Source of the DNA: Phallusia mammillata
Taxonomy: Eukaryota
Direction of reading: 5' to 3'
Assembly: GCA_965637545.1 (NCBI GenBank)
Contig: OZ281497.1
Span: forward strand, 25,544,001 to 25,608,000
Length of the DNA: 64,000 nucleotides
Shown here: positions 313 through 61,870 of the stretch, in pieces
How the letters are laid out: the number at the start of each line of letters is the position of its first letter
How positions within the stretch are numbered: the stretch's first letter is position 1
The notes under the pieces: generated by a model
What the model saw: only the letters and a program-made list of their open reading frames with translations
Databases searched by the model: none
Told to the model about the DNA's origin: nothing
Made by a program: the position numbers and the translations under genes

Positions 313-1725
313 ATGGATGTGACCCAAGATCAATTTAAGTTGTACAAACGAAGGTGGGCATTTCTTTTTGGAATATTTCTTCTACAATTTTGTGCCGGAA
401 TATCATTTTCCAGTTACGGACAAATCAACTGGTTTTATGTTGAGTTCTTCAAATCAACTCCAGCAACAGTGGATTGGATCACCAACGCAAGAAATATCAG
501 TGCTATAGTCATAACATTCCCCCTTGCCTTTCTCATTTTCAAGGATAAAATTGGGCTAAGAGGACTCGTACTTGTCATCGGCGGCAGCTCTACCGTTGGT
601 CTTCTGTTTGTTACTTTGTCTCTGATCGATCGTTCTCTGATTGCTCTGATAGTAATCGGACAAATCTTTTGCGGACTTTCAGAAACAGTTGCAGTCGGTG
701 CCCCATCAACTTTTGCTGTGCTTTGGTTTCCAGAAAATCAAGTCGGAACGGCGATTGCTTTAAATGTTGTCGGTCTGTATGTGGGAACTGAAGTTGGATA
801 CACATTGCCTTCATATCTTGTGACACCTTCGAACGATACCGTGGAATACAAAGGAATGTTAAGCCTTAAACATTTAGCAGCAGGACAACGTCAATTGCGT
901 TACTTGTATGGGGCATTTCTGGCAATTTCTACAACTGTAACTTGCTTGTTTGTGATTTTCTTAACCGACAAACCTCCAACGCCACCAACTCATGCCCAAG
1001 ATTTGAAGAATAAGGAATTGAAACCTGAAAAGTTTGCGAAGGAGTTTTTTAATGAAACTAAACAACTTTTTTTAATGCCCTCTTATGCTTTAATCTGCAT
1101 AGTCATCGGATTTATATTTCAACTTGAACTAATTGAAAATATGATGATGTCTGAAATCATAGCTGATCTTCACATTGCGAAAAATGTTGAGCCATCTACA
1201 TTAAGCGGTTATATCATGTGTACATTCGGCGTTGGCGCTATTGTTGGCCTCACTTCTGGTGGCAAAGTAGTCGACCGTTTCAAAAGATACAAGCTTATGG
1301 CGTTATGCGGGGGTACTGCAGACTTCCTCTCGATTCTGGGAATTGCCATCAGCGCAATATGCAAAAACCCTTCAGGTTTGTATGCATGTAACGTATTGTT
1401 TGGATTCTTGACTGGCTTTACTATCGTAGTTCTATTTGAAATGGCTACACAACTGACTTATCCGATTGACGAGACGCTGGTGAACAATTGGATGACCGGA
1501 ATTCAAACTTTAATCGCTTTGCTGATGGGCATTCTCGCAAGGGTCATGTTTCATCATTGGAAGAGTATTGGGGTGCTTGCCTTTCAATGTGCTTGTGTGT
1601 TGATGGCTCTATTGATGCTAACCTTAGTTTCTTCGAGGAATCGTAGATTGGAAGTTGATGACCAAAGAGTGACAGATGAAAAACCAGAAGATGCTGAAAC
1701 ACCATTACTCAGCGCTCAAAAATAA
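313..1725 (+). CDS. MFS transporter, FLVCR/SLC49-like, intact single-exon ORF (470 aa); copy A1
   Basis: About 12 hydrophobic segments. Motifs LYKRRW, WFPENQVGTA, TDKPPTPPT, VVDRFKRYK, FEMATQLTYP and SRNRRLEV parallel recalled FLVCR motifs (WFGxxEVSTA, KEKPxxPPS, ILDYTKTYK, FEFAVEITYP). Confidence 0.9.
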   Translation: MDVTQDQFKLYKRRWAFLFGIFLLQFCAGISFSSYGQINWFYVEFFKSTPATVDWITNARNISAIVITFPLAFLIFKDKIGLRGLVLVIGGSSTVGLLFVTLSLIDRSLIALIVIGQIFCGLSETVAVGAPSTFAVLWFPENQVGTAIALNVVGLYVGTEVGYTLPSYLVTPSNDTVEYKGMLSLKHLAAGQRQLRYLYGAFLAISTTVTCLFVIFLTDKPPTPPTHAQDLKNKELKPEKFAKEFFNETKQLFLMPSYALICIVIGFIFQLELIENMMMSEIIADLHIAKNVEPSTLSGYIMCTFGVGAIVGLTSGGKVVDRFKRYKLMALCGGTADFLSILGIAISAICKNPSGLYACNVLFGFLTGFTIVVLFEMATQLTYPIDETLVNNWMTGIQTLIALLMGILARVMFHHWKSIGVLAFQCACVLMALLMLTLVSSRNRRLEVDDQRVTDEKPEDAETPLLSAQK

Positions 1726-2948
1726 TATAAAACACACCGATCTCTAAAACTTGTCTTATAATTATGTAGAGCAAGTCGTCTTTGTACATATTTGTTGTTT
1801 TACCATGCTGTTTCAATGCGTTTTTTTGTGGTTAGGAACTTTTGTTGAAATAAGATGATGAAAATGCCTAATTTTTTGTATGTATCTTAAACGAACGGTG
1901 AAAAACTTCAGACTTATTAAAGTTTACAGTATGCTGATATACACGCGACTGTTGCGTTTGATGTCATACAGTTTATAATGGTAAATCGTGATTATACCAT
2001 ACCTCTATAAACTTGATATCATATACGTTAAAAGAGTACGCAATTGTGTGAAAAAAGTACAAAGTTTGTATTTAGGAAACGAAATATTTGAAATATAAAA
2101 CTTCATTGCTTGGAAGTCACGATATGTACATATTGTTTATCAAATGACTTTCCCATGTCGCCATAACCGGATACCATTTGGTATATGTGCAATATACGTT
2201 TAAAGATCTAAAAAATGTTCGTGATAGCTTTGCTCATACATCGGAGCAGAATACCACAACTTAACGTTTCAAATACCAGATTTTTTATGTCTGATTGTGA
2301 AAGTTACTTTCGAGGTCCAATATGTTGGCTTTTCTAATAAACAACATGACATGCTAAAGTTCGGTAGCGATTGCATTACTGTATATTAGGGAATGATAAC
2401 GCTTTTTTCAAAACTTTTTCAACCTCATAACAGTTCTGGTTAGTTTAAGTTAAATTGGTTGCCCTTTATATGCACAAACTCAACTTGATAAGAAATTTCT
2501 CCCAGATGGTACGAACGAACAGTATTTTGTATTTTAGGGTTATTGCGCTATTCGGATAAATATAACCATTATCAGGTGCCAGTTTGGAATTTTTGAACAG
2601 TGTCATTCATTTACGGTATATCGAGCGCCAGAATGTTGTTCATTAGGGCAATTTAAAACTTTTTTAAAAGAATACAACAGTTACAATAAAAAAACATTTT
2701 CGTTACTCTAGCTTGGCTAGGAATAACAATGAAGGTCTCTCGTGCCACAAGAAACGTTCTGAGGAACGACGATTAAGCGGCTTTCATTTGGCCATCAGAA
2801 CCTGTGAGTTCAACCCCCCGTCATATGCAATCGTCTGTACCCGTGCATGTTCGTGTGGTCGGTTGTGATCCTACCGTAGAACATTCCCAAAATACAGAAA
2901 TCAATCATGACTCAAATAGCAGGACACTTAACTTATTAGCCCATTTTT

Positions 2949-3167
2949 TTAGTATCCTTGCTGTTTCGTGAAACTGTTCAACGATGACCATGTGAGGAAA
3001 TGGTCTGGCTTTACATTCTGTGACAGTATTTTTTTAATAAATGTAACCATCCAAGTAGCCAGTTGCTGGACTAACCTAATGCCCAGCAGTCCCAAACCGC
3101 CATGTTTAAGACTATTGTCTATTGTGTTTGTTTTCCGGAGAAATCTTTGTAATGGTCTGTCAATCAA
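2949..3167 (-). mobile_element. Possible small L1/Tx1-type ORF2 remnant
   Basis: Minus-strand translation ...KHGGLGLLGIRLVQQLATWMVTFIKKIL resembles the GGLGL motif C-terminal to the RT of L1/Tx1 LINEs. Short and degenerate. Confidence 0.35.
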
Positions 3168-3322
3168 ACTTTCAGGCCTAAACCTGATTCTGAAAATTCG
3201 GGTTCGAGCTCGAATTTCAGGCCCGTTTACTACTCTAGACTACTGCATTTAATTGCGCATGTCATTGATCAATGGCAACTCGATCATTCAAGTTTCCTAA
3301 ATTTAATTTTCTTTCCTTATAT

Positions 3323-4493
3323 CTAATTCATTGACGAGATTGGAAATAGCAGCAGTATGCTAATAAACAAACACGCACATTGACAGGCAAGCACTCCAAT
3401 GCCTCGCCAGTGCTGTAACATGACCCCTGCGAGTAGGCCTACGAGAAAAACGATCGCTGATTGGATCCCGGTCATCCAAGTGTTGACCAGTGTTTCGTCG
3501 TACAGAATCCAAACAATGCGTTGCATGCGTATATACCTGAAGTGCTTCTGTATATTACACTAATGGCAATTCCTAAGTTTAAAAAAAGGTCCATGATACT
3601 TCCACATATTGTCAGAAGTTTGTATCTTTTGCACCAGTCAACGAATTTGCCTCCAAATCCAAAGCCCACGATAGCACCAAAACTGGACATGCACATAAAG
3701 TAACTGCCCAAACGTACTTGTTGTGAAATGTGTATGTCAACAATGATTTCAGACATCATCATATTTTGAAACATGCCTACATGGAACAAAACATATGATA
3801 GCATGGAAAAAAGACCTTTGTTTGACGAAAGAAAACCTTTGCAGTTTTCTCAACTTTTACATCCTTATTCTTTACATCTTGTGCAACTGTTGGTGGTGCG
3901 GGAGGCTTATCGGTCAAGAAAATCACAAACAAAATGGTTACAGCTACAGATATGGCCAGAAATCTGCCATAGGTGTAACGCAATTGACGTTGTCCTGCTG
4001 CTAAAGCTCCAAGGCTTGAAATTCCTTTGTGTTTTAATGTATGGTTTGAATGTAACACAAGATATGAAGGCAATGTGTATCCAACTTCATTTTCCACATA
4101 GACTTACAACATTTAAAGCAATTGCTGTTCCGACTTGATTTTCTGGAAACCAAAGCACAGCAAAAGAGGAAGGCACCCCCAAACCTACAGCTGCTGACAG
4201 TCCGCAAAAAATTTGTCCAATTACTATCATAGGAGACCGATTGTCGAACTGCCGGCGCTGACTAGTATAAGCGTTTTAAGGCCAATTTTGTTCTTGAAAA
4301 TAAAAAAGGCAAGAGGAAATGTGATAAATATGACGCTGATATTTCTTGCGTTGGTGATCCAATCCACTTGTGCTGGAGTTGCATTGAAGAACTGAACGTA
4401 AAAACTATTTAGTTGCCCGTACCTGGAGAACTATATTCCGACAAAACACTGTAGAACAAATAGTCCGAACAGAAACCGCTGGTATAATTTCAT
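3323..4493 (-). pseudogene. Decayed FLVCR-like MFS pseudogene (P-type), convergent with copy A1
   Basis: Minus strand reads MKLYQR..., has an in-frame TAG at 4431-4433, then DWITNARN. Later segments (ENEVGYTLPSYLV, MMSEII, DETLVNTWMTGIQ) are spread over three frames. Confidence 0.9.
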
Positions 4494-4617
4494 GTCCTAT
4501 GTAATTTCCATCTTTGTTCCAAATCTTATATTTTCTTGATTGTCCAATATTATATTCCGATTTTTTGCGATTTCTAAAAATGCTTTGGAAGATAATAGAG
4601 TCTATTATCTATTAAAT

Positions 4618-6114: not shown

Positions 6115-7527
6115 TTATTGTTGAGAGCCGAGTAATGGTGTTTTAGCATCTTCAGGTTTTTCATCTGTCACTTTTTCGTCACGAACTTCCAATCTACGAT
6201 TCCTCGAAGAAACTAAGGTTAGCATCAGTAGAGCCATCAACACACAAGCACATTGAAATACAAGCACCCCAATACTCTTCCAATGTTGAAACATGATCCT
6301 TGCAAGAATGCCCATCAGCAAACCTATTAAAGTTTGAATTCCGGTCATCCAATTGTTAACCAGCGTCTCGTCGATCGGATAAGTCAACTGTGTGGCCATT
6401 TCAAACAGAACTACGATAGTAAAGCCAGTCAAGAATCCAAACAGTGCGTTACATGCATATAAGCCTGAAGGGTTTTTGCATATTGCGCTGATGGCAATTC
6501 CCAGAACCGAAAGGAAGTATGCAGTACTCCCGCATAACGCCATAAGCTTGTATCTTTTGAAACGGTCGACTACTTTGCCACCAGAAGTGAGGCCAACAAT
6601 AGCGCCAACGCCGAATGTACACATGATATAACCGCTTAATGTAGATGGCTCAACATTTTTCGCAATGTGAAGATCAGCTATGATTTCAGACATCATCATA
6701 TTTTCAATTAGGACAAGTTGAAATATAAATCCGATGACTATACAGATTAGAGCATAAGAGGGCATTAAAAAAAGTTGTTTAGTTTCATTAAAAAACTCCT
6801 TCGCAAACTTTTCAGGTTTTTCTTCCCCATTCTTCAAATCTTGGGCATGAGTTGGTGGTGTTGGAGGTTTGTCGGTTAAGAAAATCACAAACAAGCAAGT
6901 TACAGTTGTAGAAATTGCTAGAAATGCCCCATACATGTAACGCAAATGACGTTGTCCTGCTGCTAAATCTTTAAGACTTAACATTCCTTTGTGTTCCACG
7001 GTATCGTTCGAAGGTGTCGCAAGATATGAAGGCAATGTGCATCCAACTTCATTTCCTACATACAGACCGACAACATTTAAAGCAATTGCTGTTCCAACTT
7101 GGTTTTCTGGAAACCAAAGCACTGCAAAAGTTGATGGGGCACCGACTGCTACCGTTTCTGAAAGTCCGCAAAAGATTTGTCCGATTACGATCAGAGCAAT
7201 CAGAGAACGATCGATCAGAGACAAAGTAACAAACAGAAGACCAATGGTAGAGCTGCCGGCAATCACAAGTACGAGTCCTCTTAGTCCTATTTTATCCTTA
7301 AAAATGAGAAAGGCAAGGGGAAATGTTATGAATATAGCACTAATATTTCTTGCGTTGGTGATCCAATCCACTGTTGCTGGAGTTGATTTGAAGAAATCAA
7401 CATAAAACTAGTTGATTTGTCCGTAACTGGAAAATGATATTCCGGCACAAAATTGTAGAAGAAATATTCCAAAAAGAAATGCCCACCTTCGTTTGTACAA
7501 CTTAAATTGATCTTGGGTCACATCCAT
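6115..7527 (-). pseudogene. Full-length FLVCR-like MFS copy A2 with one nonsense codon (W>stop) early in the ORF
   Basis: Same length as A1 (1413 bp), with ATG at 7527. The codon that is TGG in A1 (INW) is TAG here (plus-strand cta 7408-7410). The rest is open (418-aa ORF in the track). Confidence 0.85.
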
Positions 7528-7639
7528 TGCTATTGAAATATATATTTATTTATATGACAAATGCAAAGCCTATTTTAAATTTGAACTGCAATTTCTACTG
7601 AAAAACAACGCAACGTAAATATTTAGTAACAAATAAAAC

Positions 7640-8200: not shown

Positions 8201-8329
8201 GTTGATAAAATACCAAAGGAGGGCGCAAAGAGCATTTAAGAATCTTTAAGAGCACAATTGTGAAAAAATACTGAGGGATAGGGCTATTAGGGTTGAGACG
8301 AGGTTTTATAATAAAAATAACAAGTTGAA

Positions 8330-8450
8330 ACCAGTTGATTTGTCCGTAACTGGCGAATGATATTCCGGCACAAAATTGCAAAAGAAATAATCCGAAAAGA
8401 AATGCCCACCTTCGTTTGTACAACTTAAATTGCTCTTAGATAACATCCAT
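8330..8450 (-). pseudogene. 5' fragment of an FLVCR-like copy (first ~40 codons only)
   Basis: Reverse complement encodes MDVI*EQFKLYKRRWAFLFGLFLLQFCAGISFASYGQINW, then runs into MITE sequence. Its upstream 8450-8590 matches the upstream of A1 (170-312). Confidence 0.85.
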
Positions 8451-8842
8451 TGCTATTGAAATACTTACTTTTATGGCAAATGCTATGTCTATTTTAAATT
8501 TTACCTGCAATTTCTTAAAAAAACAACCGAACGTAAATATCTTTTAACAAATAAAACCTATCGTCTGACTTTTCGTGTGAATATCTAATGTAGGTTTTGC
8601 GTTAGATAATCTAGCAGCTGTAATTACCTCAAGGATTAGCCTATTAAGACTACAATATCTGCTACCGACTAATTTCTGTTGAAATTACAGTTAAACTATT
8701 TTAGCAGGGCAATACTTTCTGATGCAAACCACCATTCACACACCACCATCCAATTTTAATAAATGAGTTACGAACACTCAGGTCAAAAATGGCAGATTGT
8801 CTGATTACATACATAATATGAAATCAATCCCTAGTATTGACA

Positions 8843-11768: not shown

Positions 11769-12416
11769 CAAGGATTGCCCATGTGACTCTCAACACAATC
11801 AAACAGCTTGCTTAGTATTAACGTTTTGACATGCATAGGCAGCGAATCTAGATTAACAGCAGGAACTTAGCTGAACTTAAGCCTGCGCGGAATTCGTCCC
11901 CGAAAGCGTCCTGGGTTCTTACCCTGTGAAAAAACGTTATTCCTGGCTGCAATAGCTTATTTATACGTTTGTTTTATTGTCCTCGAAACTCGTTTATTTG
12001 TAATTTAGTTACTGGGTGAGCGCGGCCATGTTATTCCGGAGAACTAAATCTTAAAACGAAGTAAGGGTTACATTGATAACACGAAAATCGTAAAAGACGC
12101 AGAAGCACGAACATAAAAATAAATAAAACGTGGCACGAACATACTCATGATTCTGAAAAAATACCCCATATGTTACAGCGTTGGCAGAAACGATTGAATA
12201 CATCAATTTCCTGATACTAGTACAGGAAATGACAAACGGATAAATTCTCAACACTAACCAACATAAACAACTGTCATGAATGTTGACACAAAAGCCGAGC
12301 AGACCCAAATGATAATTATTTTGATTCCATCAAAAGTAAAAAATAAATAATCCTTAAATCCCGTTAACCACCCTAATGTAGAGACTTTTCTATATACATC
12401 GTGTAGATATAAACAA

Positions 12417-12468
12417 GTCATCCGACGTTTCGAAGTTCTATACGGGGCGTCTTCATCAGGGTAATGTC
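12417..12468 (-). ncRNA. Type I hammerhead ribozyme core (PLE-associated), stem II degraded
   Basis: Minus strand: ...accCTGATGAagacgccccgtatagaacttcGAAAcGTCggatg, directly after the PLE endonuclease C-terminus. Confidence 0.55.
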
Positions 12469-12794
12469 AGCTATACCCAACACAGTCGTTCCTATAACAG
12501 CAAGATGTTGAACACGAGAAAGATGCAGGCGCAAGAACGCAGATAAAGACGTACATAAAAAAACTACTCAACATTAGAAGTTCAGTTTTTATGTTTAAAG
12601 TGTTGCGCGCGAGTAAATTCCACGATTCTAAAAACACTCTTTTTCTGTAATCTGTCTCTTTGGCAATCACTGTAGCAGCTGCAAAGTTGATCACGTTATC
12701 GCACTCAGTTGCTTAGCTAGCCAAGATCGATTTCCCACGCGCCACTCCTTGCCCCCCGCTGCGGACGCCTATGAACACTAGCCAAGTTTAATTC

Positions 12795-13099
12795 GTTAGA
12801 GCTACTATCGTAAGACCCTATGGCAAACAAGGTTGACTAAATACCAAAGGAGGGCGCAAAGAGCATTTAAGAATATTTAAGAGCACAATTGTGAAAAAAT
12901 ACTGACGGATAAGGCTATTTGAGTTGGGGCGAGGTTTTATAATAATAATAACAATAAACCCAACTTATGAAACTGGTTTCTAACCCTTGCTATCTCAGCC
13001 TCACTCTTAATTTAAATTTAAATAAATGTGCTTTTTGCGCCATCTATCAGAATTTAGCAAACTGTGTCTGTTGTGAGTTTTTTTGTTAATATCTCTACC
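12795..13099. mobile_element. MITE related to the GGTAGAGC family (degenerate termini)
   Basis: Starts gttagagctacta and ends taatatctctacc, with inverted ggcgcaaagagc motifs inside. Copies at 19575-19875, 8198-8330 (partial) and 34436-36210 (LINE-interrupted). Confidence 0.6.
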
Positions 13100-13400
13100 C
13101 ACCATTTAGCAAACCATTAGGAAGCAATGGCGGACCACACTTTAGGAAACATCGCCCTACAGGACTAACTATCCAGAAAAAAACACTCTTATTTTCTGTT
13201 TGTTATAAGACAGGACGGGGTAAAATTATAAAACACTTTTTAAAGCTGTCAAAACAACATTTGCTAACAATGAATATATATATATACCCTAGATCAGTGG
13301 TGTGGTCTCCAACGTATTGGTCGCGTAAACTGCTTTTTTTTCAGGTAAATTTGACCGCTTATTTTCCAAGTAAACCTTAAATAAGTGCATTCATCGTGAA

Positions 13401-13500
13401 TTATCACGAGACTGTCGTAAACGCACACACCTTCAAGCGCTTACCTGTATTGACTGCCACGTTTAAGACGCGGTACACGGTTATATACGACACGTCCAGA
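13401..13500 (-). repeat. Truncated LTR of the Mag-type Gypsy element
   Basis: Matches 36321-36410 and 38919-39005, including the same atcacgagac flank as 36311-36320. Confidence 0.7.
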
Positions 13501-13587
13501 AATCGTAGATTGGAAGTTGGAGAAGAAAAAGGGATAAGTGCGAAACAAGAAAATGCTAAAACACCATTGCTTAACTCTCAACAATAA
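13495..13587 (+). pseudogene. 3'-terminal remnant of an FLVCR-like copy
   Basis: Encodes SRNRRLEVGEEKGISAKQENAKTPLLNSQQ*, the family C-terminus. Confidence 0.85.
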
Positions 13588-15044
13588 CGGAAAACCCGGT
13601 TTCAGTGTGAAACCTTGGACGCCGAAACTTGTCATTTTGTTTCTTATTTAACGAACCGTGTTTACCCACAATGCGACAACTTCTTTCTTGTGAGCCCCAG
13701 CACACAACGCTCTATAAAATTCGGTTTAGCTGCAGAACGTTTAGCAATGATCCACCAATGGTGCCCAACACAGTTTTGCTTCAATGACGTTTTCACGTTG
13801 CGCAGCCATTTTCGACTTGTGATTTGTTTTCGGCTAGTGATTGTTTTAGTGTCACTGTGTCGTTATGTTTTCTTTCACCAAGCGAAATAAACCCAACTCA
13901 AATAGCAATGTAGCTACACTGCGTTTAACCGAATCCATCAATTATGCTGTTTATTATTTTGTGTCCCATACGTTGTGCAATCATTGATTCTTGCTCTGCA
14001 ATTGCGTATAGCCATGCTATTTAACACGAATCGAAATAAACTTTACTCAACTCCTACAATGAGCTCGTTATGCCCTTTTCGTCATTTTTTGAATTTCACA
14101 AGCCTCCATCGGCCATTGAACTCATTGCAAAAGACATGCTATGCAAAAAATTGCAATCACTTCAGTAGTTTGGAGCTATCGTTTTTTTTTCTCATACAGA
14201 ATCATCAAATAAACTTCTGTATTGCACTTTTTTATTGATATGTGCGCATTGATGCGATCAATTAAGCTTTTATCACATACAACGGGATGCACGTTGTATA
14301 AAGAAGCTGATTAAGCTGACCTTGCATTATTTTAGCAAGCCCATAGAAGTCAAGCTACTAGTTGAAAGGGGGAAATAACCTCAATAACTTAATTTGAATG
14401 CATTGTTTCAGCAGGCCCTTGCCTGATTTTTCTGTGAATAAAGGGCCCAAATTCAGTCGTCAAGTTAGATTTACCAAGATGAATGTGGCCGGGGTGTGAA
14501 GTAATCCCATGTTGTTCCTACTTTGGCCGAACTAGAACAACTCAAATTAAAGGTTTGGTCCTAGCTAATGAATAGTCTAACCATTGAACAAAATCTTTCA
14601 ACTGCTGTTGCAAAGAAAGTACAGTTGCCCAGAAAAGAAAAATCAAGCAAAACTGACAACTCAAAAATTAAGGCCGACACTTTTATGGGGACAAGTCGAT
14701 GCGGTTATTTTAGTGTTTTGGTAGCCAAGTTTTGAAATCTATTCACTGTAAAGTTAAAATCAACTACAAAATAAATACAAACGGTGTCTATGAAACGCGC
14801 CGAAATGACAGACTTCTAGCGCTTAGGCGTCGTCGCGCGTTTTGTTGGAAAACAATGATCAGCTTTTAAGTTTAACAATGGATAGGAACGAAAGCAAAAA
14901 CAGAACATTAGTGCTCTGTTGCGGGAAAAGTTAATATTCAAACATCATGTGTTCTGTGCATGAACGGATAATATGTCTCTGATTTATAACATTATCATTT
15001 CAACCCCTTTTAATAGAAATATTTATGCTGTGCTGTACCATCGC

Positions 15045-16085
15045 TAATATAGTTTTTACATTCAGTTCTTTAACGAACAAGTGGATTGGATCACCAACGC
15101 AAAAAATACCAGCGCCATATTTATCACATTTCCCCTTGCCTTTTTCATTTTCAAGGACAAAATTGGCCTTAAAACGCTTATATTAGTCAGCGCCGGCAGT
15201 TCAACAATCGGTCTTCTGTTTGTTACTTTGTCTTTCATCAACCGTTCGTTGTTTGCTCTGATAGTAATTGGGCAAATCTTTTGCGGACTTTCACAAACTG
15301 TGGGTGTAGCAGCGCCATCAACTTTTGCTGTGCTTTGGTTTCCAGAAAATCAAGTCGGAACAGCAATAGCTTTAAATGTTGTCGGTCTGTATGTGGGAAA
15401 TGAAGTTGGATACACATTGCCTTCATATCTTGTGACACCATCAAACCATACATTGAAACACAAAGGAATTTCAAGCCTTGGAGCTTTAGCAGCAGGGCAA
15501 CGTCAATTGCGTTACACCTATGGCAGATTTCTGGCCATATCTGCCGCTTTAGCTATTTTGTTTCTGATTTTCTTGACTGATAAGCCTCTCACACGCCACA
15601 TTTGCACAAGATCTGAAGAATAAAGATATAAGAGTTGATAAGACTACAAAGTTTTTCATTTGTCAAACAAAGTTGCTGTTTTCCATGCTCTCATATGTTT
15701 TGTTATGTGTTGTCTTCGGAATTTTGTTCCATGCAGGTATGTTTGAAACTATGATGATGTCTGAAATCATTGCTGACTTACAGATTTCCCCCTCCGTTTT
15801 GGGTTACATCATGTGCACATCTAGTTTGGGTGCCATCGTGGGCTTTGGATTTGGCGGCAAATTTGTTGCCCGGTGCAAAAGATACAAACTTCTGGCAATA
15901 TGTGGAAGTATCATGGACTTTTTTCCAAATTTCATTAGTGTAATATACAGAAGCACTCCAGGTATATACGCATGTAACGCATTGTTTGGATTTTGTACAG
16001 GATTTATTAACGTTGCACTGTTTGAAATGGCCACGCAGCTGACCTATACGGTGGATGAGACGCTGGTCAACACTTGGGCCTATCT
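15045..16085 (+). pseudogene. Decayed FLVCR-like MFS pseudogene (P-type), unit 1
   Basis: TM1 is missing. Two ORF fragments (15081-15623, 15673-16092) are separated by a frameshift. Ends at DETLVNTW. Confidence 0.9.
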
Positions 16086-16877
16086 AGAGTAACAATTGTT
16101 ACAAAAATCTCTTCTAGAGTGTTTTTTATTTGAACGAATGTATTCTGTAAAAATGGCTTTAAATCGTCTAAATGATAAAAATTCTGGCGCTCTATATATC
16201 GTAAGTTAATGACCGTGCAAAAATTTCTAACTGGCACCTGATAATGGTTCAATTTTATCCGAATAGCGCGATTTCGCAATAACCTTAAAATACAACATAT
16301 TATTTGTTTGTATTGTCGGGCAGAAAAATGCCATCAAGTTGAGTTTGCGCGTACAAAGTGCCATCAATGTTAAAAGGTTTTGAAAAAACGTTTTCATTCA
16401 CTAATATAACGTTAAACTTTAGCATGTCGTGTTGTTAATTAGAAATGCCAACATATTGGACCTTGATAGTAACTTTCCCAATCAGACAAAAAGGAAACTG
16501 GTATTTGAACACTGTGTGGTGTCATTTTATACTCTGATGTAAACGCAAACCTACCACGAACTTTTTTTTAATCTTTTAAGGTATATTGCACATATACCAC
16601 ATGGTATCTGGTTATGGGAGATGGACAAGTCATTTGATAAACAATATACAAATATTTTGACCTACAAGCAATAACGTTTTCATATTTCCGTTCGATTAAA
16701 TTATTTACAAAAAAATATGCATTTTCATTTTCTTATTTCAACAGAAGTACCTAACTACATAACATACAAAACAGTACATAAAAACAGTAGCCTGTGTGGT
16801 GAATATACAAAAAAAGGACAAAGACGGCTTGCTGTACGAAATTGTAAGCCAAGTTTTAGAGACTCGTGTGTTTTATG

Positions 16878-18290: not shown

Positions 18291-18419
18291 TGCCAGCATT
18301 GAAATACTTACTTTTATGGCAAATGCTATGCCTACTTTAAATTTTACCTGCAATTTCTACGGAAAAACAACGCAACGTAAATATCTAGTAACAAATGAAA
18401 CCTATCGTTTTTGCACTTA

Positions 18420-20738: not shown

Positions 20739-20822
20739 TCATTTCTGAAAAAGCCAGACCCCTTTCTATTAAGAAAAGGTGTCTGAAATCTGCTGTCTGG
20801 CATTAGTGGTGTTGCAAATACA

Positions 20823-21932: not shown

Positions 21933-21956
21933 CAGTCTGCCCATGACCTAGATCCG

Positions 21957-28473: not shown

Positions 28474-28688
28474 TATATATACCCTAGATCAGTGGTGTGG
28501 TCTCCAACGTATTGGTCGCGTAAACTGCTTTTTTTCAGGTAAATTTGACCGCTTATTTTCCAAGTAAACCTTAAATAAGTGCATTCATCGTGAATTATCA
28601 CGAGACTGTCGTAAACGCACACACCTTCAAGCGCTTACCTGTATTGACTGCCACGTTTAAGACGCGGTACACGGTTATATACGACACG

Positions 28689-48116: not shown

Positions 48117-49514
48117 ATGGAATCTAGCGACAACGTGACTTTGTATACCCGCAGATGGGTCTTCCTTCTAGGGCTCTTCATCTTGCATTTCTTATCAGGA
48201 ATTTCCTTCGCAAGTTACGGTCAAATCAGCAGCTTTTACGTTCAGTTCTTCAAGGCCTCCCACGCACAAGTGGATTGGATCACCAACGCGAGAAACATCG
48301 GAGCTATATTTCTCACTGTTCCATTCGCTTGGATGATCTTCAACGGCAAAATGAAAATGCGGGCTGGAATTTTAATTATGGCAATCAGCTCAACAGTTGG
48401 ACTATTGTTAGTGACTGTTTCGTTTCTCGATCGTTCTTTTTTTGCTCTTATTATTGTTGGACAAATTTTCTGCGGGATTGCTGAAACTGTTAGTGTGATT
48501 ACCCCAACCACTTTCGCCCTGTTCTGGTTTCCAAAAAAGCAAGTTCGTCTGGCGATTTATCTGAACATGATGGGCCTGTATGTTGGGGATGACTTGGGGT
48601 ACACGATTCCGCCGAAGCTGGTACATACATTTAATCACACCAATGGAGACGATCATGATCTTAACCCTGAGGAAATGGCATCGGCGCAACGTTCACTTCG
48701 CAACATGTACGCGGTATACTTGGGCATATCTGCTATTGTGACCGTCTTGTTTGCAATCTTCCTGACTGATACACCTCCCACGCCACCTAGGGCTGCTGAA
48801 ATACAAAGTTACATTCACACACATATGGATAAAACGATGACAGAATTTTGGAAAAAGACCAAAACACTTTTCACAGACCCAGCTTTTGTATTGATCAGCA
48901 TAGTCATTGGGTTGATATTCCAGTTAGGCCTAATCGAAACGATGATGATGTCTGAAATCGTAGAACGGCTTGACATTTCTTACCACCAGAGCCCAGCATT
49001 GTTAAGTGGAGAAATCATGAGCATGTACGGCATAGGTGCAGTGGTGGGTCTCTTTGCAGGTGGAATGATTATCCACTACATCAAGAAATACAACTTGCTT
49101 TCAATAGTGGGAACTACAGCGGTTTTTCTGTCCACAGTTGCAATCATTATAAGCGTCCGTATGAGAAACACTCAGGCGATATTTGTAACCAACGTTTTGT
49201 TCGGGATTTTTACGGGGGCGGCAGAAGTCTGGCTCTTTGATATGGCTACAGAGTTGGCCTATCCAATTGACGAGTGTCTATCACATACGTGGATATCCGG
49301 TATTGAAACTGCAGTCGCCTTGTTGATTGGAATACTTGCTCGAGTCACGTTCAATGCCTGGGAGAGCATTGGAGTCCTGTCATTCCAATGCGCTTGCGTG
49401 TTTGTGAGCATCTTGTTGTGTTGCTTGGTTTTGTCATTTGGACGCAAACTAGAGACAGAGACGTCAACAAGCAGTGCATCTACCTCACAAACACCTTTGC
49501 TTAATCCTCAGTAA
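48117..49514 (+). CDS. FLVCR/SLC49-like MFS transporter, intact (465 aa); divergent copy D
   Basis: Open ORF with LYTRRW, WFPKKQV, TDTPPTPP and FDMATELAYP variants of the family motifs. Confidence 0.9.
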   Translation: MESSDNVTLYTRRWVFLLGLFILHFLSGISFASYGQISSFYVQFFKASHAQVDWITNARNIGAIFLTVPFAWMIFNGKMKMRAGILIMAISSTVGLLLVTVSFLDRSFFALIIVGQIFCGIAETVSVITPTTFALFWFPKKQVRLAIYLNMMGLYVGDDLGYTIPPKLVHTFNHTNGDDHDLNPEEMASAQRSLRNMYAVYLGISAIVTVLFAIFLTDTPPTPPRAAEIQSYIHTHMDKTMTEFWKKTKTLFTDPAFVLISIVIGLIFQLGLIETMMMSEIVERLDISYHQSPALLSGEIMSMYGIGAVVGLFAGGMIIHYIKKYNLLSIVGTTAVFLSTVAIIISVRMRNTQAIFVTNVLFGIFTGAAEVWLFDMATELAYPIDECLSHTWISGIETAVALLIGILARVTFNAWESIGVLSFQCACVFVSILLCCLVLSFGRKLETETSTSSASTSQTPLLNPQ

Positions 49515-54953: not shown

Positions 54954-56393
54954 ATGAGCCCTAACGTTAAATACGAACCAATTGAAAGCACGTGGAAGTT
55001 GTACAAACGAAGATGGGTGTTTTTAATCGGACTTTTAATACTTCAATTCTTCGCTGGCATCTCGTTCAGCAGCTACGGTCAAATCAGTGACTTTTACGTT
55101 AAGTTCTTCAATGCGTCGCATGCACAAGTGGATTGGATCACCAACGCAAGAAATATCAGCGCTATATTCATCACATTTCCACTCGCATGGTTAGTGTTCA
55201 AAGGAGTCGTCCGTTTGAGGTGTCTTATACTTATTGTTGCTGTATGTTCCACGTCTGGGTTATTTCTTGTCACAATTTCACTGCTGAGTCCACACTTTTT
55301 CCCATTCATTGTCATCGGCCAAGTGCTATGTGGCCTTTCCGAGACCGTAGGGATTGCAGTGCCATCTATATTTGCTGTGCTTTGGTTTCCAGAATCACAA
55401 GTAGGAACCGCCATCGCTATTAACATCATGGGTGTATGTATTGGCGATGGAACAGGTTACCTATTGCCCCCAACTCTTGTATATACCAGCCACAAGTCAA
55501 TCAACGCTACAGGCATTATTGTGGAGTCTCAAGATGACAGTGACTTTATGGAAAAGAGTCAGCATTCACTTTTAATCATGTATGGTTCATTTTTAGCGAT
55601 ATCAGCAGTTGTTTCTGTTTTCTTCTTCATTTTTATCACCGACAAACCACCCAGTCCGCCAACTACAGCACAGTATGTGAAAAACACGGCGCTTTATGTT
55701 CATCGATCCTTCTACGAGTTCCTTCAAGAAACCAAGTCACTCATCCTAAACCGCTCATACATCCTTATCTGCATTGTCGTGGGATTTGTTTTCCAGATTG
55801 TTCTTCTGGAAAACCTAATGATGTCAGAAATTATCAAAACAAGCTCAGTGGTCGGCGATATAAATCCGGCAATTTTGAGTGGTTTTATAATGAGTTTGTA
55901 TAGTATTGGGAGCACCATAGGGCTCGGCGTCGGAGGAAAAATAGTGGACAAATGCAAACGTTACAAAATGTTAGCGATTGTAGGGACAACCATGCTTTTC
56001 CTTTCAACGGTTGGAATCGCTTTCGGTGTGCAGCATAAACACATGATAACCTTATTAGTCTCCAACGGACTGTTCGGATTTTTCTCGGGTTCTACAGAAG
56101 TCGTAATCTTCGAAATAGCAACGCAACAGACTTACCCGAAAGATGAAACTATGGTGAATACGTGGATGACGGGGATTCAAACTCTTATTGGATTTAGTTT
56201 AGGAATTTTTGGTCGTATCATTTTCACCGCATGGGGCAGTATTGGTGTGCTGGTATTTCAAAGCCTTTGTATTTTCGTTTGTATCATTCTCGTGTTTTGC
56301 GTTTCGTCGCGAAATCGCAGACTCGAAGTGAACGACAGCGACCTCGAGTGGTCAGTTGATAGCGATCCCACAACACCACTGATTACCAACTAA
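54954..56393 (+). CDS. FLVCR/SLC49-like MFS transporter, intact (479 aa); divergent copy E
   Basis: Open ORF with all family motifs; longer TM5-6 loop. Confidence 0.9.
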   Translation: MSPNVKYEPIESTWKLYKRRWVFLIGLLILQFFAGISFSSYGQISDFYVKFFNASHAQVDWITNARNISAIFITFPLAWLVFKGVVRLRCLILIVAVCSTSGLFLVTISLLSPHFFPFIVIGQVLCGLSETVGIAVPSIFAVLWFPESQVGTAIAINIMGVCIGDGTGYLLPPTLVYTSHKSINATGIIVESQDDSDFMEKSQHSLLIMYGSFLAISAVVSVFFFIFITDKPPSPPTTAQYVKNTALYVHRSFYEFLQETKSLILNRSYILICIVVGFVFQIVLLENLMMSEIIKTSSVVGDINPAILSGFIMSLYSIGSTIGLGVGGKIVDKCKRYKMLAIVGTTMLFLSTVGIAFGVQHKHMITLLVSNGLFGFFSGSTEVVIFEIATQQTYPKDETMVNTWMTGIQTLIGFSLGIFGRIIFTAWGSIGVLVFQSLCIFVCIILVFCVSSRNRRLEVNDSDLEWSVDSDPTTPLITN

Positions 56394-58776: not shown

Positions 58777-60208
58777 ATGGAAAATGAAATAGGAAATGGG
58801 AAAGTGAAAAGAGATGTCCAGGGCCCAATCTTGTACAAACGAAGATGGGCATTTCTTTTCGGGCTCTCCATTTATCAGTTTTTTGGCGGAATCTCATTTG
58901 CCAGTTACGGTCAAATAAGTAGCTTCTACGTTCAGTTCTTCAACGCCTCGCATGTAGAAGTGGATTGGATCACCAACGCAAGGAATATCAGCGCTATATT
59001 CATCACATTTCCTTTAGCTTGGATGATTTATCAAGGCAAGTTAGGATTAAGAAAACTGGTTCTAATAATTTCAGTGAGTTCAACGCTTGGACTTTTCCTG
59101 GTCACCCTGTCATTAGTAGATCGTTCTCTGTTTGTTCTAATTGTGGTCGGACAAATTCTATGCGGACTTTCGGAGTCTGTTGCAGTCGCTGCACCTTCCA
59201 CTTTTGCTGCTTTGTGGTTCCCAGAAAACCAAGTGGGGTCGGCAATAGCGTTTAACGTTATTGGGATTTGCTTTGGCGATGGGACAGGTTACACTTTGCC
59301 ATCCGTTCTCACAGCGCCGTCTAACCAAACTTTGACAGATGGAACTAATCTAACATTAAATGAACTGGCATCAGGGCAACTTGGATTGCGCAACATGTAC
59401 GGTACCTTTCTGGTTATATCCGCTGTTGTAACAATATTCTTGGCGATTTTTTTCACTGATAAACCTCCCACACCACCAACATTTGCTCAAGAGCTAAAGA
59501 ACTCGGACTCTCAGGAACCTAGAACGTTAAAATTGTTTATGCGAGACACAAAACTGCTTTTTACCAATCCATCTTATGTTATGATATGCGTGGTCATTGG
59601 GCTTATATTCCAATTGGCATTGATTGAAAATATGATGATGTCTGAAATTATTGCCACAACTGGATTGCCATTCAATGGTACTTCGGATCAACTCAGCGGT
59701 TACGTTATGGCTATGTTCAGTATAGGAGGAATCCCGGGAATGCTTATCGGCGGAAAACTCGTAGACCGATGCAAAAGATTCAAACTTCTTTCTATCTTCG
59801 GAAACACAACTGTACTTCTTTCAACAGCAGCACTTGCTGTAAGCGTTTTGTTGAAAAACTCTGTTGGAATGTTTGTAAGCAATGCATTGTTTGGTTTCTT
59901 TACCGGTACAGTAAGCCGTTGTTTTGTTCGAAATGGCCACACAGCTGACTTATCCAGTGGACGAGACACTGGTCAACACTTGGATGACCGGCATTCAAAT
60001 GACCATTGCTCTATTCCTTGGACTTTTCGGGAGGCTTACCTTTGATAACTGGGGAAGTGGAGGGGTGCTATTCTTTCAGTGCGCTTGTGTGGTGTTTGCT
60101 TTATTTTTATGCTGTTTGGTTTCCTCGAGAAATCGCAGACTGGAAGTTGGTTCCAGAGATGAGGAAAATCAACATACTATGCATTCACCTTTAATCCCTT
60201 CACATTGA
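58777..60208 (+). pseudogene. Full-length FLVCR-like copy F with a single +1 frameshift (or sequencing error)
   Basis: Removing one A at 59913/59914 (gtaagcc > gta gcc) joins ORFs 58777-60045 and 59924-60208 into ...GTVAVVLFEMATQLTYP...SPLIPSH*. Confidence 0.8.
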
Positions 60209-61109
60209 GAGTTCGCTTATTTCATCTCGATTAACGATTGTTAATTTGGAATATTTGTAAAATATAAATTGTAGGAAAATTATAACCCAAAACGACGAGA
60301 CATGATTTAATATTTAAATGTTCCGGCAAATCCTTATCCCATCATGAGTGATATGAGGCCCCATGTCAAAAGCGTTTAAAAACTATAATATCTCTTTATA
60401 AGTCTATTTGGGTCGTTATTTTCCTCATTAAAGTTATGATCAGAGCCGTGTATAATGTTTAAAAAATTATGTTATTATCAATAAAACGAAAACTAGTTTT
60501 AATTGATTGTTGTTTATTTTTTGTGTACATCAACGAATATTTGCAGTTATTTAGGTCTAAATCTAAGCTGTTTAACAGAATGGCTAACACATCAACAGAT
60601 TTTTGACCAGTGGTGATTAAACTTTTTAGGGGTACGCTACTTTAACAAAAACTTTGTCGTAAACTGCATGGTTGAATCCTTAATATTGAGTATTGAGTTA
60701 AATTCGGGTAATGAAATGTTGATTGCCTTTCTGCTATTAAACCCACACTAAAGACAAGGGGTGTCATATTAATTAGGCAAAAATGTTGTTTTAGGGATTT
60801 AACAACTGATACTAACTGACACTTATAAAGAGAAAAACGTAAATTATTTTACTACCGAAACCACAAGTGCTTAACATTGACTAGACTTTTTTGCCGTTAC
60901 AAACAAAGTTCTCATTGTGTTTGAAGTACTTTTAAAATAGTTAAAATAAGTCCATTGTGTTAAATTATGTACATAAGTCTGATCAAAAACATGCAACAAC
61001 CTACTAAAATGCCCCTTAAAAGTCAAGCACGGAACGATATCACAAACAAATCAAATACGAAAACTATAAATAAAATCACGGCGTAAGTAGGGGGTATGAT
61101 TACTGTTGA

Positions 61110-61870
61110 TTGCATTTTCTCCTTTCACCATTTCCAATCTTCGATTGTGAGTTTAAACAAAACAACTTAAAAACAATTTTGCGGTTGCGCATGCGCACTG
61201 AAAGGAAATGGCTTCCCCTAAGGCTTCCCCAAATGTTAAATACAAGCCTTCCCAACTAATTTGCAGCTTGAATCTCAAACATTAAAGTTGTAACCAGAGT
61301 TTCGTCAATTGTGTAAGTTATTTGGGTTATCATTTCAAAGAAACTTACACAAATAAAGTAAAACTAAAAGTCCAACATTGCGTTGTTAACAAAAATCCAT
61401 GCTGCGGTCTTGAAAAATAACGCTTATAGCAATAGCTATTGCCGTTACAAAAATTGATGCATTTCCAATGCAAGTTGTTTCTATCGTTTACAACGGTCCA
61501 CAACTTTGCCTCCAATGACGAGACCCGGTAAACCTCCTAAACTAAACATGCTCATATCCGCCCAATGTAACAAGTAACAAAGTTTGTGATAAATCAAAGT
61601 CAGTCATGATTTCAGACATCATTAAATTTTCTGGCATAAAAGTTAAAGCCCAAAAGAATACTAATTAATATGTGTGACGGATTAGTGAAAAGTTGTTTAA
61701 TCACTTTGTAAAACTTGTTTAATGTTCTATCCACTTGAAGATCTGTGCTCTTCCGCTCTTGAGCTGTCGTGGGTAGAGCTGCCGGTTTGTCAGTTAAAAA
61801 TATCATCGTCACTACAGCTGATACAGCAAAATACGAGTTGCTTATTTCGTACAAAACAATTACCAAACCA
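61110..61870 (-). pseudogene. Heavily decayed FLVCR-like pseudogene (C-terminal ~60%)
   Basis: Minus-strand segments FLTDKPAALPTTAQE, MSMFSLGGLPGLVIGGKVVDRCKR*, FEMITQITYTIDETLV and HNRRLE. Confidence 0.8.

What the first reader, a model, noticed from the sequence alone, without database searches (positions are those of the whole stretch)
313..61870. Array of about 17 intronless FLVCR/SLC49-like transporter copies undergoing birth-and-death evolution
Seen: 7 intact ORFs, 2 single-lesion copies, 5 pseudogenes and 3 fragments of one family in 64 kb, on both strands, none with a coding intron. Established: vertebrate FLVCR1/2 are multi-exon, low-copy genes that transport choline and ethanolamine (earlier linked to heme). 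Inference: a retroposed or intron-stripped founder expanded into a lineage-specific transporter repertoire. This turnover pattern is typical of detoxification, defence or chemosensory families, not of housekeeping transporters. The array may extend beyond both window edges.
Basis: partly seen in the sequence, partly recalled or inferred. Interest (0 to 1): 0.8.

Follow-up and report, generated by a model that had tools for sequence, protein, structure and literature searches.

The report
Sea-squirt array of FLVCR-like transporter genes
A sea squirt (Phallusia mammillata) carries a 112-kb cluster of 31 single-exon copies of a transporter gene related to the human choline carrier FLVCR; the copies keep duplicating and decaying and have lost the choline-binding residues, which is a solid but fairly ordinary case of gene-family expansion.

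Summary
The window holds 17 loci of one MFS family: 7 intact, 2 with a single lesion, 5 multiply broken and 3 fragments. They lie on both strands and none has a coding intron.

The genome is Phallusia mammillata. The array runs past both window edges and totals 31 loci (18 intact) in 112 kb. The whole genome has at least 85 single-frame, near-full-length relatives in several clusters.

Sequence and a confident predicted fold both place the proteins nearest FLVCR1/2, but they are not FLVCR orthologues. A canonical FLVCR gene of at least 10 exons sits on another chromosome and keeps all five choline-site residues. The array copies have replaced all five and carry two acidic pocket residues.

Intact paralogues show dN/dS of 0.13-0.34, and dS runs from 0.03 to saturation, which fits birth-and-death under purifying selection. 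The 32-gene clade containing the array has no member outside Phallusia in the library searched.

The single-exon state is older than this array, because two relatives in the ascidian Clavelina are single-exon too. I found no retroposition hallmarks; recent copies arose at the DNA level. Evidence for expression is thin. An earlier scan note (s1-394875) flagged the upstream part of this array. FLVCR-like expansions are already reported in a mite. Substrate is unknown.

The parts
313..1725 (+). Intact single-exon FLVCR-like MFS gene (copy A, 470 aa)
   Evidence: ORF. Pfam MFS_1 at E 1.8e-24. 92-94% DNA identity to copies at 6082-7643, 16688-18405 and 31906-33623.
3287..4514 (-). Pseudogene with several stops and frameshifts
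   Evidence: Three HSPs in three frames, with 8 and 4 stops inside them.
6118..7533 (-). Single-lesion copy B, with one in-frame stop just upstream of 7371
   Evidence: One HSP covers query 1-470 at 94% identity to copy A, with one stop and no frameshift. One search reports the stop as a TAG.
8301..8510 (-). N-terminal fragment (about 50-70 codons)
11823..18613 (.). Unit 1 of a 6.8-kb tandem duplication; it carries one fragment, one pseudogene and intact copy C
   Evidence: Self-blastn: 11823-13283 matches 18614-20059 at 97.8%, and 13278-19210 matches 28473-34430 at 96.1%.
13381..13584 (+). C-terminal fragment
15036..16077 (+). N-truncated pseudogene with one stop and one frameshift
   Evidence: Its 180-aa ORF hits MFS_1.
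16878..18299 (-). Intact copy C (473 aa), matching a public Phallusia mammillata protein record
   Evidence: P0001 is 470/473 identical to it. MFS_1 at E 1.5e-25.
18360..18516 (-). 5' leader of copy C: exon at 18421-18516 and a 61-nt GT-AG intron at 18360-18420
   Evidence: Residues 1-32 of P0001 map to 18516-18421 and resume at 18359. The skipped stretch begins GTAAGT and ends TAG. The leader is shared by copies B, C and D only.
18614..33831 (.). Unit 2 of the tandem duplication, split by the LTR retrotransposon. A partial third unit follows at 33832-34430.
   Evidence: The uninterrupted paralogous site in unit 1 is at 13278-13283.
20060..28474 (+). BEL/Pao-type LTR retrotransposon inserted into unit 2 (context, not part of the family)
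   Evidence: 680-bp LTRs at 20060-20739 and 27795-28474 are 99.1% identical. Pfam finds Peptidase_A17, RVT_1, Integrase_H2C2 and DUF5641, and the Peptidase_A17 match is split between two ORFs around 25127-25179. The flanks fit an ATAT target-site duplication.
28575..28778 (+). C-terminal fragment, the duplicate of 13381-13584
30230..31302 (+). Pseudogene, the duplicate of 15036-16077
32096..33517 (-). Intact copy D (473 aa), the tandem duplicate of copy C
   Evidence: Against copy C: dS 0.028 and dN/dS 0.26. 98% identical to P0001.
39860..41275 (-). Intact copy E (471 aa), the copy used for the searches and the fold
   Evidence: MFS_1 at E 3e-30. FLVCR2 at E 9e-30. Model pLDDT 92 with FLVCR1/2 as best fold matches. 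Exact-match contigs from probable RNA runs lie at 39781-40097 and 40243-40405.
42903..43925 (-). Pseudogene with an internal deletion, frameshifts and stops
45514..46923 (+). Intact copy F (469 aa)
48117..49514 (+). Intact copy G (465 aa)
54954..56393 (+). Intact copy H (479 aa)
58777..60205 (+). Single-lesion copy with one frameshift near 59915
   Evidence: Two HSPs in frames 1 and 2 meet at 59915-59916 and contain no stops.
61084..61854 (-). Pseudogene covering the C-terminal two thirds, with many stops

Best explanation
The window is the middle of a 112-kb tandem array of 31 loci (18 intact) on chromosome-scale contig C4 of the ascidian Phallusia mammillata. The genes are single-exon and encode 12-helix MFS transporters of the FLVCR/SLC49 type.

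Shown:
- The array grew by repeated local DNA-level duplication, both direct and inverted, over a long period. The youngest event is a 6.8-kb unit present about 2.1 times, later split by an LTR retrotransposon.
- Intact copies are under purifying selection. Others have decayed to pseudogenes and fragments. This is birth-and-death evolution.
- The array belongs to a much larger single-exon family (at least 85 near-full-length loci) that is separate from the canonical multi-exon FLVCR gene. That gene is retained elsewhere with an intact choline site.

Inferred:
- The proteins are working solute carriers that use the usual MFS alternating-access cycle, but not for choline or ethanolamine. All five FLVCR ligand-contacting residues are replaced.
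- The array clade carries two conserved acidic residues at or beside positions equivalent to FLVCR ligand-contacting residues (E/D at the Q191 position, and E two residues after the Y325 position). This points to a cationic substrate, proton coupling, or both.
- A different subfamily has Arg at the Y325 position. This suggests that subfamilies handle different chemical classes.
For: Copy census and lesions. Array limits; no long ORFs lie in the 10 kb on either side.

Species: P0002 and P0003 are 100% identical, and P0001 99% identical, to array genes.

Family assignment: Pfam MFS_1. FLVCR1/2 are the only solved-structure sequence hits. The AlphaFold model has pLDDT 92 and pTM 0.90. Its twelve best fold matches are all FLVCR1/2, with TM 0.77-0.90 and E 1e-16 to 1e-18. 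The next MFS proteins score E 1e-9 or weaker.

Family size and single-frame structure.

Trees: a 32-gene clade with 100% support contains the array, and physical neighbours group together. With 117 outside representatives added, that clade still holds only Phallusia genes, and fish FLVCR1/2 fall outside all 73 Phallusia ORFs.

Canonical gene: at least 10 exon-like matches, 36-74% identical to fish FLVCR1/2, with the W, Q, F, Y and Q site residues present.

Pocket residues: their roles come from PMC11168923. Fish and mite FLVCR-type proteins keep all five. In the array clade they read F (30/32), E or D (26/32), variable, L (25/32) and T (23/32), and E276 is present in 27/32.

Selection and ages: dN/dS 0.13-0.34 and dS 0.03 to above 1.

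Duplication mechanism.

Independent DNA: a 3256-nt contig from a 2020 run spans 39687-42942 with 12 differences, at the same depth as its neighbours.
Against: - Transcription is barely documented. Only short exact-match contigs at depth 3-5, from runs merely guessed to be RNA, cover copy E. Only four family members appear in the public Phallusia protein set.
- The 96-98% tandem pair (copies C and D) could still be an assembly duplication of two alleles in a polymorphic species. I could not check read depth there.
- 'Lineage-specific' depends on what the library holds. Close relatives of Phallusia (Ascidia, Ascidiella) may be absent from it, and many near relatives are unnamed metagenome contigs.
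- The substrate inference rests on alignment to five known FLVCR residues and on no experiment. The Q447 column is the least securely aligned: HMMER and MAFFT place it slightly differently.
- Pocket positions are not more variable than average, apart from the F324 position at the 84th percentile.
Confidence: 0.85

Rival explanations
1. Assembly artefact: the copies are uncollapsed haplotigs or falsely duplicated segments rather than separate loci.
For: Unit 1 and unit 2 of the 6.8-kb tandem duplication are 96-98% identical. Copies C and D differ at dS 0.028. Ascidians are highly polymorphic (background knowledge). On C2, three copies spaced about 8.66 kb apart are identical or nearly so.
Against: Most paralogues differ by 6-55% in protein and lie in different orientations with different flanks. 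An independent DNA run differs from the window by only 0.37% over 3.3 kb, and its contig has ordinary depth. The duplicates are therefore about ten times more diverged than alleles at this locus. Unit 2 carries an LTR insertion with a target-site duplication, and unit 1 keeps the empty site. A partial third unit follows unit 2. P0001, from other data, matches C (99.4%) better than D (98.1%).
Confidence: 0.05
2. Retroposition burst: each copy is a processed retrocopy of a spliced parent mRNA, scattered and clustered by reverse transcription.
For: No copy has a coding intron. Reverse-transcriptase-bearing elements are present in the array. A multi-exon FLVCR gene exists that could in principle have been the ancient source.
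Against: Young copies share hundreds to thousands of bases of non-coding flank, including neighbouring pseudogenes. The dispersed C2 copy and copy A both start in the middle of the 5'-leader intron, and the C2 copy has no poly(A) tract at its 3' end. Physical neighbours are phylogenetic neighbours. An ancient retroposed founder remains possible, but it would pre-date the split from Clavelina, whose relatives are also single-exon.
Confidence: 0.05
3. Horizontal transfer: the single-exon family came from a bacterial MFS gene, as tunicate cellulose synthase did.
For: Single-exon structure. Many of the nearest database relatives come from metagenome assemblies.
Against: The only solved-structure hits and the best fold matches are animal FLVCR1/2. 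Bacterial NCBIfam models give only E 1e-4 to 1e-6, far below their cut-offs. Only 1027 of 1.84 billion representatives reach E 0.001, so the family is far from the mass of bacterial MFS proteins. The metagenome contigs inspected have sparse, short, Pfam-less gene calls around the MFS gene, which is typical of eukaryotic DNA. All named relatives are animal proteins.
Confidence: 0.02
4. A mostly dead array: the intact frames are young relics that are no longer expressed or used.
For: 13 of 31 loci are broken. RNA evidence is thin.
Against: dN/dS is 0.13-0.34 even for pairs with dS above 0.6, which requires long-term purifying selection on both members. 18 frames of 460-480 codons stay open across divergences up to saturation. 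Three array genes match public Phallusia protein records, one of which needs a spliced leader.
Confidence: 0.08

Closest known systems
Vertebrate FLVCR1 (SLC49A1) and FLVCR2 (SLC49A2), choline/ethanolamine uniporters
   Same: 12-helix MFS fold. They are the best, and the only strong, sequence and structure matches: E 1e-22 to 1e-29, and TM 0.77-0.90 to twelve FLVCR structures. Shared family motifs include RRW before TM1, DW, GQ, WF and YP.
   Different: Only 21-28% identical. The array genes fall outside the clade that holds fish FLVCR1/2. All five ligand-contacting residues (W102, Q191, F324, Y325, Q447) are replaced. The genes are single-exon and exist in dozens of copies, rather than about 10 exons and low copy number. 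The true Phallusia orthologue lies elsewhere (C8:12.07 Mb) and keeps those residues.
FLVCR-like expansions in the velvet mite Dinothrombium tinctorium (PMC6275457)
   Same: A lineage-specific expansion of MFS proteins about 25-30% identical to FLVCR1/2, in gene groups of 47, 27 and 21 members, with function unknown.
   Different: A different phylum and an independent event. The passages I read do not mention gene structure or tandem arrangement. The one mite protein in my alignment (from another mite species, Fragariocoptes setiger) keeps all five choline-site residues.
Ascidian proteins annotated 'putative MFS-type transporter C09D4.1' or 'FLVCR1-like' (Clavelina lepadiformis XP_076817489, XP_076816944)
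   Same: Same single-exon structure, with gene spans of 1479 and 1482 nt for 492 and 493 aa. They share the TM7 glutamate and belong to the same broad clade.
   Different: 30-33% identical. Both are singletons among unrelated genes within 10 kb either side, not array members. They carry E and R, not F and E/D, at the W102 and Q191 positions.
Birth-and-death multigene families in general (chemoreceptors, detoxification enzymes, immune receptors)
   Same: Tandem clusters, mixed orientations, graded paralogue ages, interspersed pseudogenes and species-restricted clades.
   Different: No evidence yet of diversifying selection at ligand-contacting sites. No expression or ligand data.

Membership tests
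Major facilitator superfamily (MFS) | Match to the MFS_1 profile above the curated cut-off | tested here: met
   All nine long ORFs score 75-106 bits against a cut-off of 33.4.
Major facilitator superfamily (MFS) | Fold of two six-helix bundles (12 transmembrane helices) | tested here: met
   The model (pLDDT 92.1, pTM 0.90) has long helices throughout. 435 PDB MFS chains match at E <= 0.001.
SLC49 / FLVCR-type subfamily | Closer to FLVCR1/2 than to any other solved MFS, by sequence and by fold | tested here: met
   FLVCR1/2 are the only PDB sequence hits. The top 12 fold hits are all FLVCR1/2 at E 1e-16 to 1e-18, against 1e-9 or weaker for the next family.
FLVCR1/2 orthologues (choline/ethanolamine transporters) | Placement inside the FLVCR1/2 clade in a gene tree | tested here: not met
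   Fish FLVCR1/2 and a mite homologue fall in a clade containing none of the 73 Phallusia single-exon ORFs. A separate multi-exon gene on C8 is 36-74% identical per exon to fish FLVCR1/2.
FLVCR1/2 orthologues (choline/ethanolamine transporters) | Conserved ligand site: W102, Q191, F324, Y325, Q447 (FLVCR2 numbering, PMC11168923) | tested here: not met
   The array clade reads F, E/D, variable, L, T. Fish FLVCR1/2, the mite protein and the C8 multi-exon gene keep all five. The Q447 column is the least secure.
FLVCR1/2 orthologues (choline/ethanolamine transporters) | Choline or ethanolamine transport activity | not testable with these tools
   This needs uptake assays.
SLC49A3 (MFSD7) / SLC49A4 (DIRC2) | Orthology to these two other SLC49 members | not tested
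   No tool gave me named SLC49A3 or SLC49A4 sequences, and neither appears among the PDB sequence hits.
Processed retrogenes | Homology limited to the mature mRNA, a 3' poly(A) tract and flanking target-site duplications | tested here: not met
   Young copies share non-coding flanks and part of the leader intron. There is no poly(A) at the 3' edge of the C2 copy. This is not testable for the ancient founder.
Birth-and-death multigene family | Graded paralogue ages, purifying selection on survivors, interspersed pseudogenes, lineage-restricted clades | tested here: met
   dS 0.03 to saturated and dN/dS 0.13-0.34. 13 of 31 loci are broken. The clade holds only Phallusia genes.

The most novel reading that the evidence does not exclude
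The family of over 85 single-exon genes, of which this array is the largest block, may be a tunicate-specific solute-carrier repertoire. Its subfamilies would have re-tuned the FLVCR pocket for different chemical classes: an acidic pair in the array clade suits cations, and an arginine in another clade suits anions. It could serve chemical defence or xenobiotic handling in a filter feeder. It could also serve the unusual metal (vanadium) and blood-cell chemistry for which Phallusia and its family are known. I found nothing describing such a system in the papers searched.
Probability: 0.12. Interest if true: 0.65.

Novelty: new member of a known kind. Interest (0 to 1): 0.4.

Why it matters
FLVCR1/2 were only recently shown to be choline/ethanolamine carriers, and little is known about their invertebrate relatives. 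One genome here holds both the conserved multi-exon FLVCR gene, with its intact ligand site, and dozens of single-exon relatives whose ligand site has been rebuilt. That gives a natural series for asking which pocket residues set substrate choice in this fold.

For tunicate genomics, it documents one of the larger tandem transporter families and a clean, datable example of array growth: a tandem unit, an LTR insertion and a preserved empty site. It also flags that automatic names such as 'FLVCR2-like' should not be read as 'choline transporter'.

It does not reveal a new kind of system. Lineage-specific tandem expansion of a transporter family is common, and an FLVCR-like expansion is already reported in a mite.

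Tried and rejected
- **Word-index protein search.** A single protein and a 12-sequence profile both returned only three Phallusia proteins and two irrelevant hits, because hydrophobic words swamp the candidate list. I used the exhaustive representative search instead.
- **Naming relatives.** Most of the 30 representatives looked up are unnamed metagenome proteins. I could not identify their source organisms, so how far the single-exon family spreads beyond ascidians stays open.
- **Literature.** Searches for FLVCR with ascidian or Ciona, and for tunicate MFS expansion, found nothing relevant. One search call failed on a term-length rule. A broader search turned up the mite precedent.
- **Bacterial origin.** Rejected; see the rival explanations.
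- **Retroposition of recent copies.** Rejected on shared flanks, intron remnants and the lack of poly(A).
- **Haplotig explanation for the whole array.** Rejected on divergence and on an independent DNA contig. It is not fully excluded for the C/D pair.
- **Pocket diversification.** Column entropy within the 32-gene clade puts the most variable positions in loops and termini. Four of the five pocket-equivalent positions are average or conserved, so there is no support for diversifying selection.
- **Hydropathy count of helices.** Too crude: it gave 16 overlapping peaks. The structure model replaced it.
- **Other genes in the window.** Ten further ORFs outside the family gave no Pfam hits except a reverse-transcriptase zinc-binding tail.
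- **Reads.** The single reads call returned assembled contigs only, so it gives no transcript levels, ends or strands.

Full report
**1. What is in the window**

The window is AT-rich eukaryotic DNA (GC 0.34-0.45) and contains no N. It is G000:C4:25,544,001-25,608,000 of a 240-Mb assembly.

Nine long ORFs hit Pfam MFS_1 at E 1e-21 to 1e-30. A six-frame protein search with these ORFs merges into exactly 17 loci. Comparing each broken locus with its closest intact relative gives this breakdown:
- 7 intact genes;
- 2 copies with one lesion each: 6118-7533 has a single in-frame stop, and 58777-60205 has a single frameshift near 59915;
- 5 copies with several stops and frameshifts;
- 3 short fragments.

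Every intact copy is one open frame of 465-479 codons. Each aligns to human FLVCR2 from just before helix 1 to after helix 12 (residues 79-496), so there is no coding intron and no missing exon.

**2. Which organism, and how far the array goes**

Three public Phallusia mammillata proteins named 'FLVCR2-like' match array genes. P0001 is 470/473 identical to the copy at 16878-18299. P0002 and P0003 are 100% identical to two copies just downstream of the window. The genome is therefore P. mammillata, an ascidian.

I fetched 40 kb upstream and 30 kb downstream of the window. The array runs from 29.3 kb upstream to 18.7 kb downstream. In all there are 31 loci in 112 kb: 18 intact, 2 with one lesion, 7 pseudogenes and 4 fragments. 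The outermost 10 kb on each side hold no family member and no long ORF. An earlier first-stage note (s1-394875) recorded eight intact copies in the overlapping upstream window. I found seven intact copies upstream plus copy A, which agrees.

**3. How the array grew**

Self-alignment shows a 6.8-kb unit (11823-18613) repeated in tandem at 96-98% identity, followed by about 600 bp of a third unit. Unit 2 is interrupted by an 8.4-kb BEL/Pao-type LTR retrotransposon at 20060-28474. Its 680-bp LTRs are 99.1% identical. The flanks fit an ATAT target-site duplication, and unit 1 preserves the uninterrupted site. The order of events is therefore duplication first, insertion second.

Older copies of part of the same unit lie at 196-1898 and 5972-8161, at 91-94% identity.

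In the gene tree, physical neighbours are phylogenetic neighbours. The copies from -9 kb to +41 kb form one clade, and the far-upstream and downstream copies form another.

A copy on another chromosome (C2:11.8 Mb) nests inside the youngest group. It shares only a 1.55-kb segment, which begins in the middle of the 5'-leader intron and ends 25 nt after the stop codon. It has no poly(A) tract. Copy A starts at the same point.

So recent growth and dispersal went through DNA segments, not processed mRNA.

**4. Are the copies alive?**

Pairwise dN/dS among intact paralogues is 0.13-0.34. dS ranges from 0.028 (the tandem pair C/D) through 0.1, 0.25, 0.65 and 1.05 up to saturation. Two conclusions follow: duplication has been continuous, and survivors are under purifying selection.

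Direct evidence of transcription is weak. No listed run holding the locus is recorded as RNA. Three runs guessed to be RNA contain short exact-match contigs over the 3' part of copy E (39781-40097 and 40243-40405), at depth 3-5. They also contain a much deeper contig from some other paralogue.

P0001 provides indirect evidence. It carries an N-terminal extension that maps to the genome only after removal of a 61-nt GT-AG intron at 18360-18420. It also differs from this assembly at 3 of 473 residues. It therefore comes from a spliced transcript or a splice-aware model built on other data. The extension is not shared by other paralogues, so I read it as 5' leader. At least copies B, C and D thus have a non-coding intron.

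**5. Haplotigs?**

Most paralogues differ by 6-55% in protein, in orientation and in flanks, so they are separate loci. A contig from an independent 2020 DNA run spans 39687-42942 with 12 differences (0.37%), at the same depth as neighbouring single-copy contigs. The 2-4% divergence between the two tandem units is about ten times that allelic figure, and unit 2 has its own insertion. I could not measure depth over the tandem units, because only one reads call was allowed. A small doubt therefore remains for that pair alone.

**6. Family assignment**

Among solved structures, only FLVCR2 (E 9e-30) and FLVCR1 (E 5e-22) match by sequence. An AlphaFold model of copy E, built on a 61-sequence alignment, has pLDDT 92.1 and pTM 0.90. 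Its twelve best PDB matches are all FLVCR1/2 structures, with TM-scores of 0.77-0.81 by the model and 0.86-0.90 by the target, and E 1e-16 to 1e-18. Other MFS transporters follow only at E 1e-9 and TM about 0.6-0.7. Bacterial family models score far below their cut-offs. The proteins are FLVCR/SLC49-type MFS transporters.

**7. The array genes are not the FLVCR orthologues**

Searching the whole genome with copy E gave 92 matches. Nearly all are near-full-length and in a single open frame, and they lie in clusters on C1, C2, C4, C6 and C8. I extracted 73 ORFs of at least 300 aa. A search with fish FLVCR1 added about eleven more single-frame loci.

The fish FLVCR1 search also found two loci that match exon by exon with much higher identity:
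- C8:12,071,970-12,076,740 (-) has at least 10 exon-like pieces, 36-74% identical to fish FLVCR1/2.
- C1:11,731,800-11,736,830 (+) has at least 5 pieces.

In a tree with 117 outside representatives, fish FLVCR1/2 and a mite homologue sit in a clade with no Phallusia single-exon gene. The 32 genes that include the array form a 100%-supported clade containing only Phallusia sequences.

The exhaustive search found only 1027 representatives at E <= 0.001 among 1.84 billion. Beyond P0002, a Phallusia array gene (51%), the best hit is 36% identical.

**8. The ligand site is rebuilt**

The cryo-EM study of human FLVCR1/2 (PMC11168923) describes how choline is held. W102 and Y325 make cation-pi contacts. 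F324 lines the site. Q191 and Q447 bind the hydroxyl group (FLVCR2 numbering).

In my alignment, fish FLVCR1, fish FLVCR2 and the mite protein keep all five residues. So does the multi-exon C8 gene, and the C1 gene keeps at least W and Q.

The array clade differs at every position:

| FLVCR2 position | Array clade (32 genes) |
|---|---|
| W102 | F in 30 |
| Q191 | E or D in 26 |
| F324 | seven different residues |
| Y325 | L in 25 |
| Q447 | T in 23 |

In addition, E is conserved two residues after the Y325 position in 27 of 32, where canonical proteins have V or I. Another Phallusia subfamily (17 genes on C1, C6, C7 and C8) has R at the Y325 position in 16 of 17.

I infer a changed substrate. 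For the array clade this is probably a cation, or transport coupled to protons through the buried acids, as in other MFS carriers (background knowledge). Within the array clade, the most variable columns lie in loops and termini. Only the F324 position is clearly variable (84th percentile), so I see no evidence for pocket diversification among array members.

**9. Age of the single-exon state**

Two Clavelina lepadiformis relatives (30-33% identical) have gene spans of 1479 and 1482 nt for 492 and 493 residues, so they are single-exon. Each sits among unrelated genes.

Many other relatives are complete 470-520-aa gene calls on metagenome contigs. These contigs have sparse, short, unannotated neighbours and look eukaryotic; one carries a transposase fragment. 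One 800-kb contig carries several cluster members.

The single-exon founder is therefore at least as old as the common ancestor of these two ascidian orders. Whether it arose by retroposition from the multi-exon gene can no longer be read from the sequence.

**10. Comparison with what is known**

I found no paper on FLVCR-like expansions in tunicates. A comparable expansion, in gene groups of 47, 27 and 21 members about 25-30% identical to FLVCR1/2, is reported for the velvet mite Dinothrombium tinctorium (PMC6275457). Lineage-specific tandem expansion with pseudogene turnover is a familiar pattern.

What this case adds:
- a canonical, site-intact FLVCR gene alongside a very large single-exon family with a rebuilt site;
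- a well-resolved record of how the array grew.

**11. Verdict**

I class it as a new member of a known kind, of moderate interest.

Noticed in passing
window 20060-28474 (+): A young BEL/Pao-type LTR retrotransposon. Its 680-bp LTRs are 99.1% identical and the flanks fit an ATAT target-site duplication. The ORFs carry DUF1759, RVT_1, Peptidase_A17, Integrase_H2C2 and DUF5641. The Peptidase_A17 match is split between two ORFs around 25127-25179, so pol is interrupted there. I describe it only.
   Followed up: partly
window 35081-35941 (+): A 287-aa open frame with a zf-RVT domain (E 5e-9). It is probably the tail of a non-LTR retrotransposon reverse transcriptase, lying between array members.
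   Followed up: no
window 39500-39700, 41900-42100, 44500-44900: Short stretches where contigs of an independent DNA run pile up to summed depths of roughly 1700-6500, against about 25 elsewhere. These are high-copy interspersed repeats between the genes, and they also appear in the probable RNA runs.
   Followed up: no
G000:C8:12071970-12076740 (-) (L066/L067): The canonical FLVCR orthologue of Phallusia: at least 10 exon-like matches, 36-74% identical to fish FLVCR1/2, with all five choline-site residues conserved.
   Followed up: partly
G000:C1:11731800-11736830 (+) (L068): A second multi-exon FLVCR-type gene (at least 5 exon-like matches at 29-56% identity). It keeps the W and Q site residues and has YY in place of FY.
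   Followed up: partly
G000:C2:14890039-14908724 (L010-L012): Three family genes spaced about 8.66 kb apart. Two encode identical proteins and the third is nearly identical. This is either a very recent tandem triplication or an assembly duplication. A near-identical pair also lies at C6:9.812 and 9.820 Mb.
   Followed up: no
G000:C8:15.58-15.66 Mb; C4:21.43-21.47 Mb; C4:9.71-9.83 Mb: Further tandem clusters of single-exon family members (roughly 9-14 loci each), belonging to other subfamilies. The C8 cluster's subfamily has Arg at the position of FLVCR2 Y325.
   Followed up: partly
window 18408 (and 193-298, 8457-8564; L072:7514): Copy A, the fragment at 8301-8510 and the dispersed C2 copy all lose homology with copy C at the same point, in the middle of the 61-nt leader intron. 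This recurrent segment boundary is unexplained.
   Followed up: partly
L074 (ENA metagenome contig, 800 kb) and cluster of P0044: An unidentified, eukaryote-like metagenome contig carries several near-identical single-exon family members. Multi-copy arrangements therefore also exist in at least one other organism.
   Followed up: no
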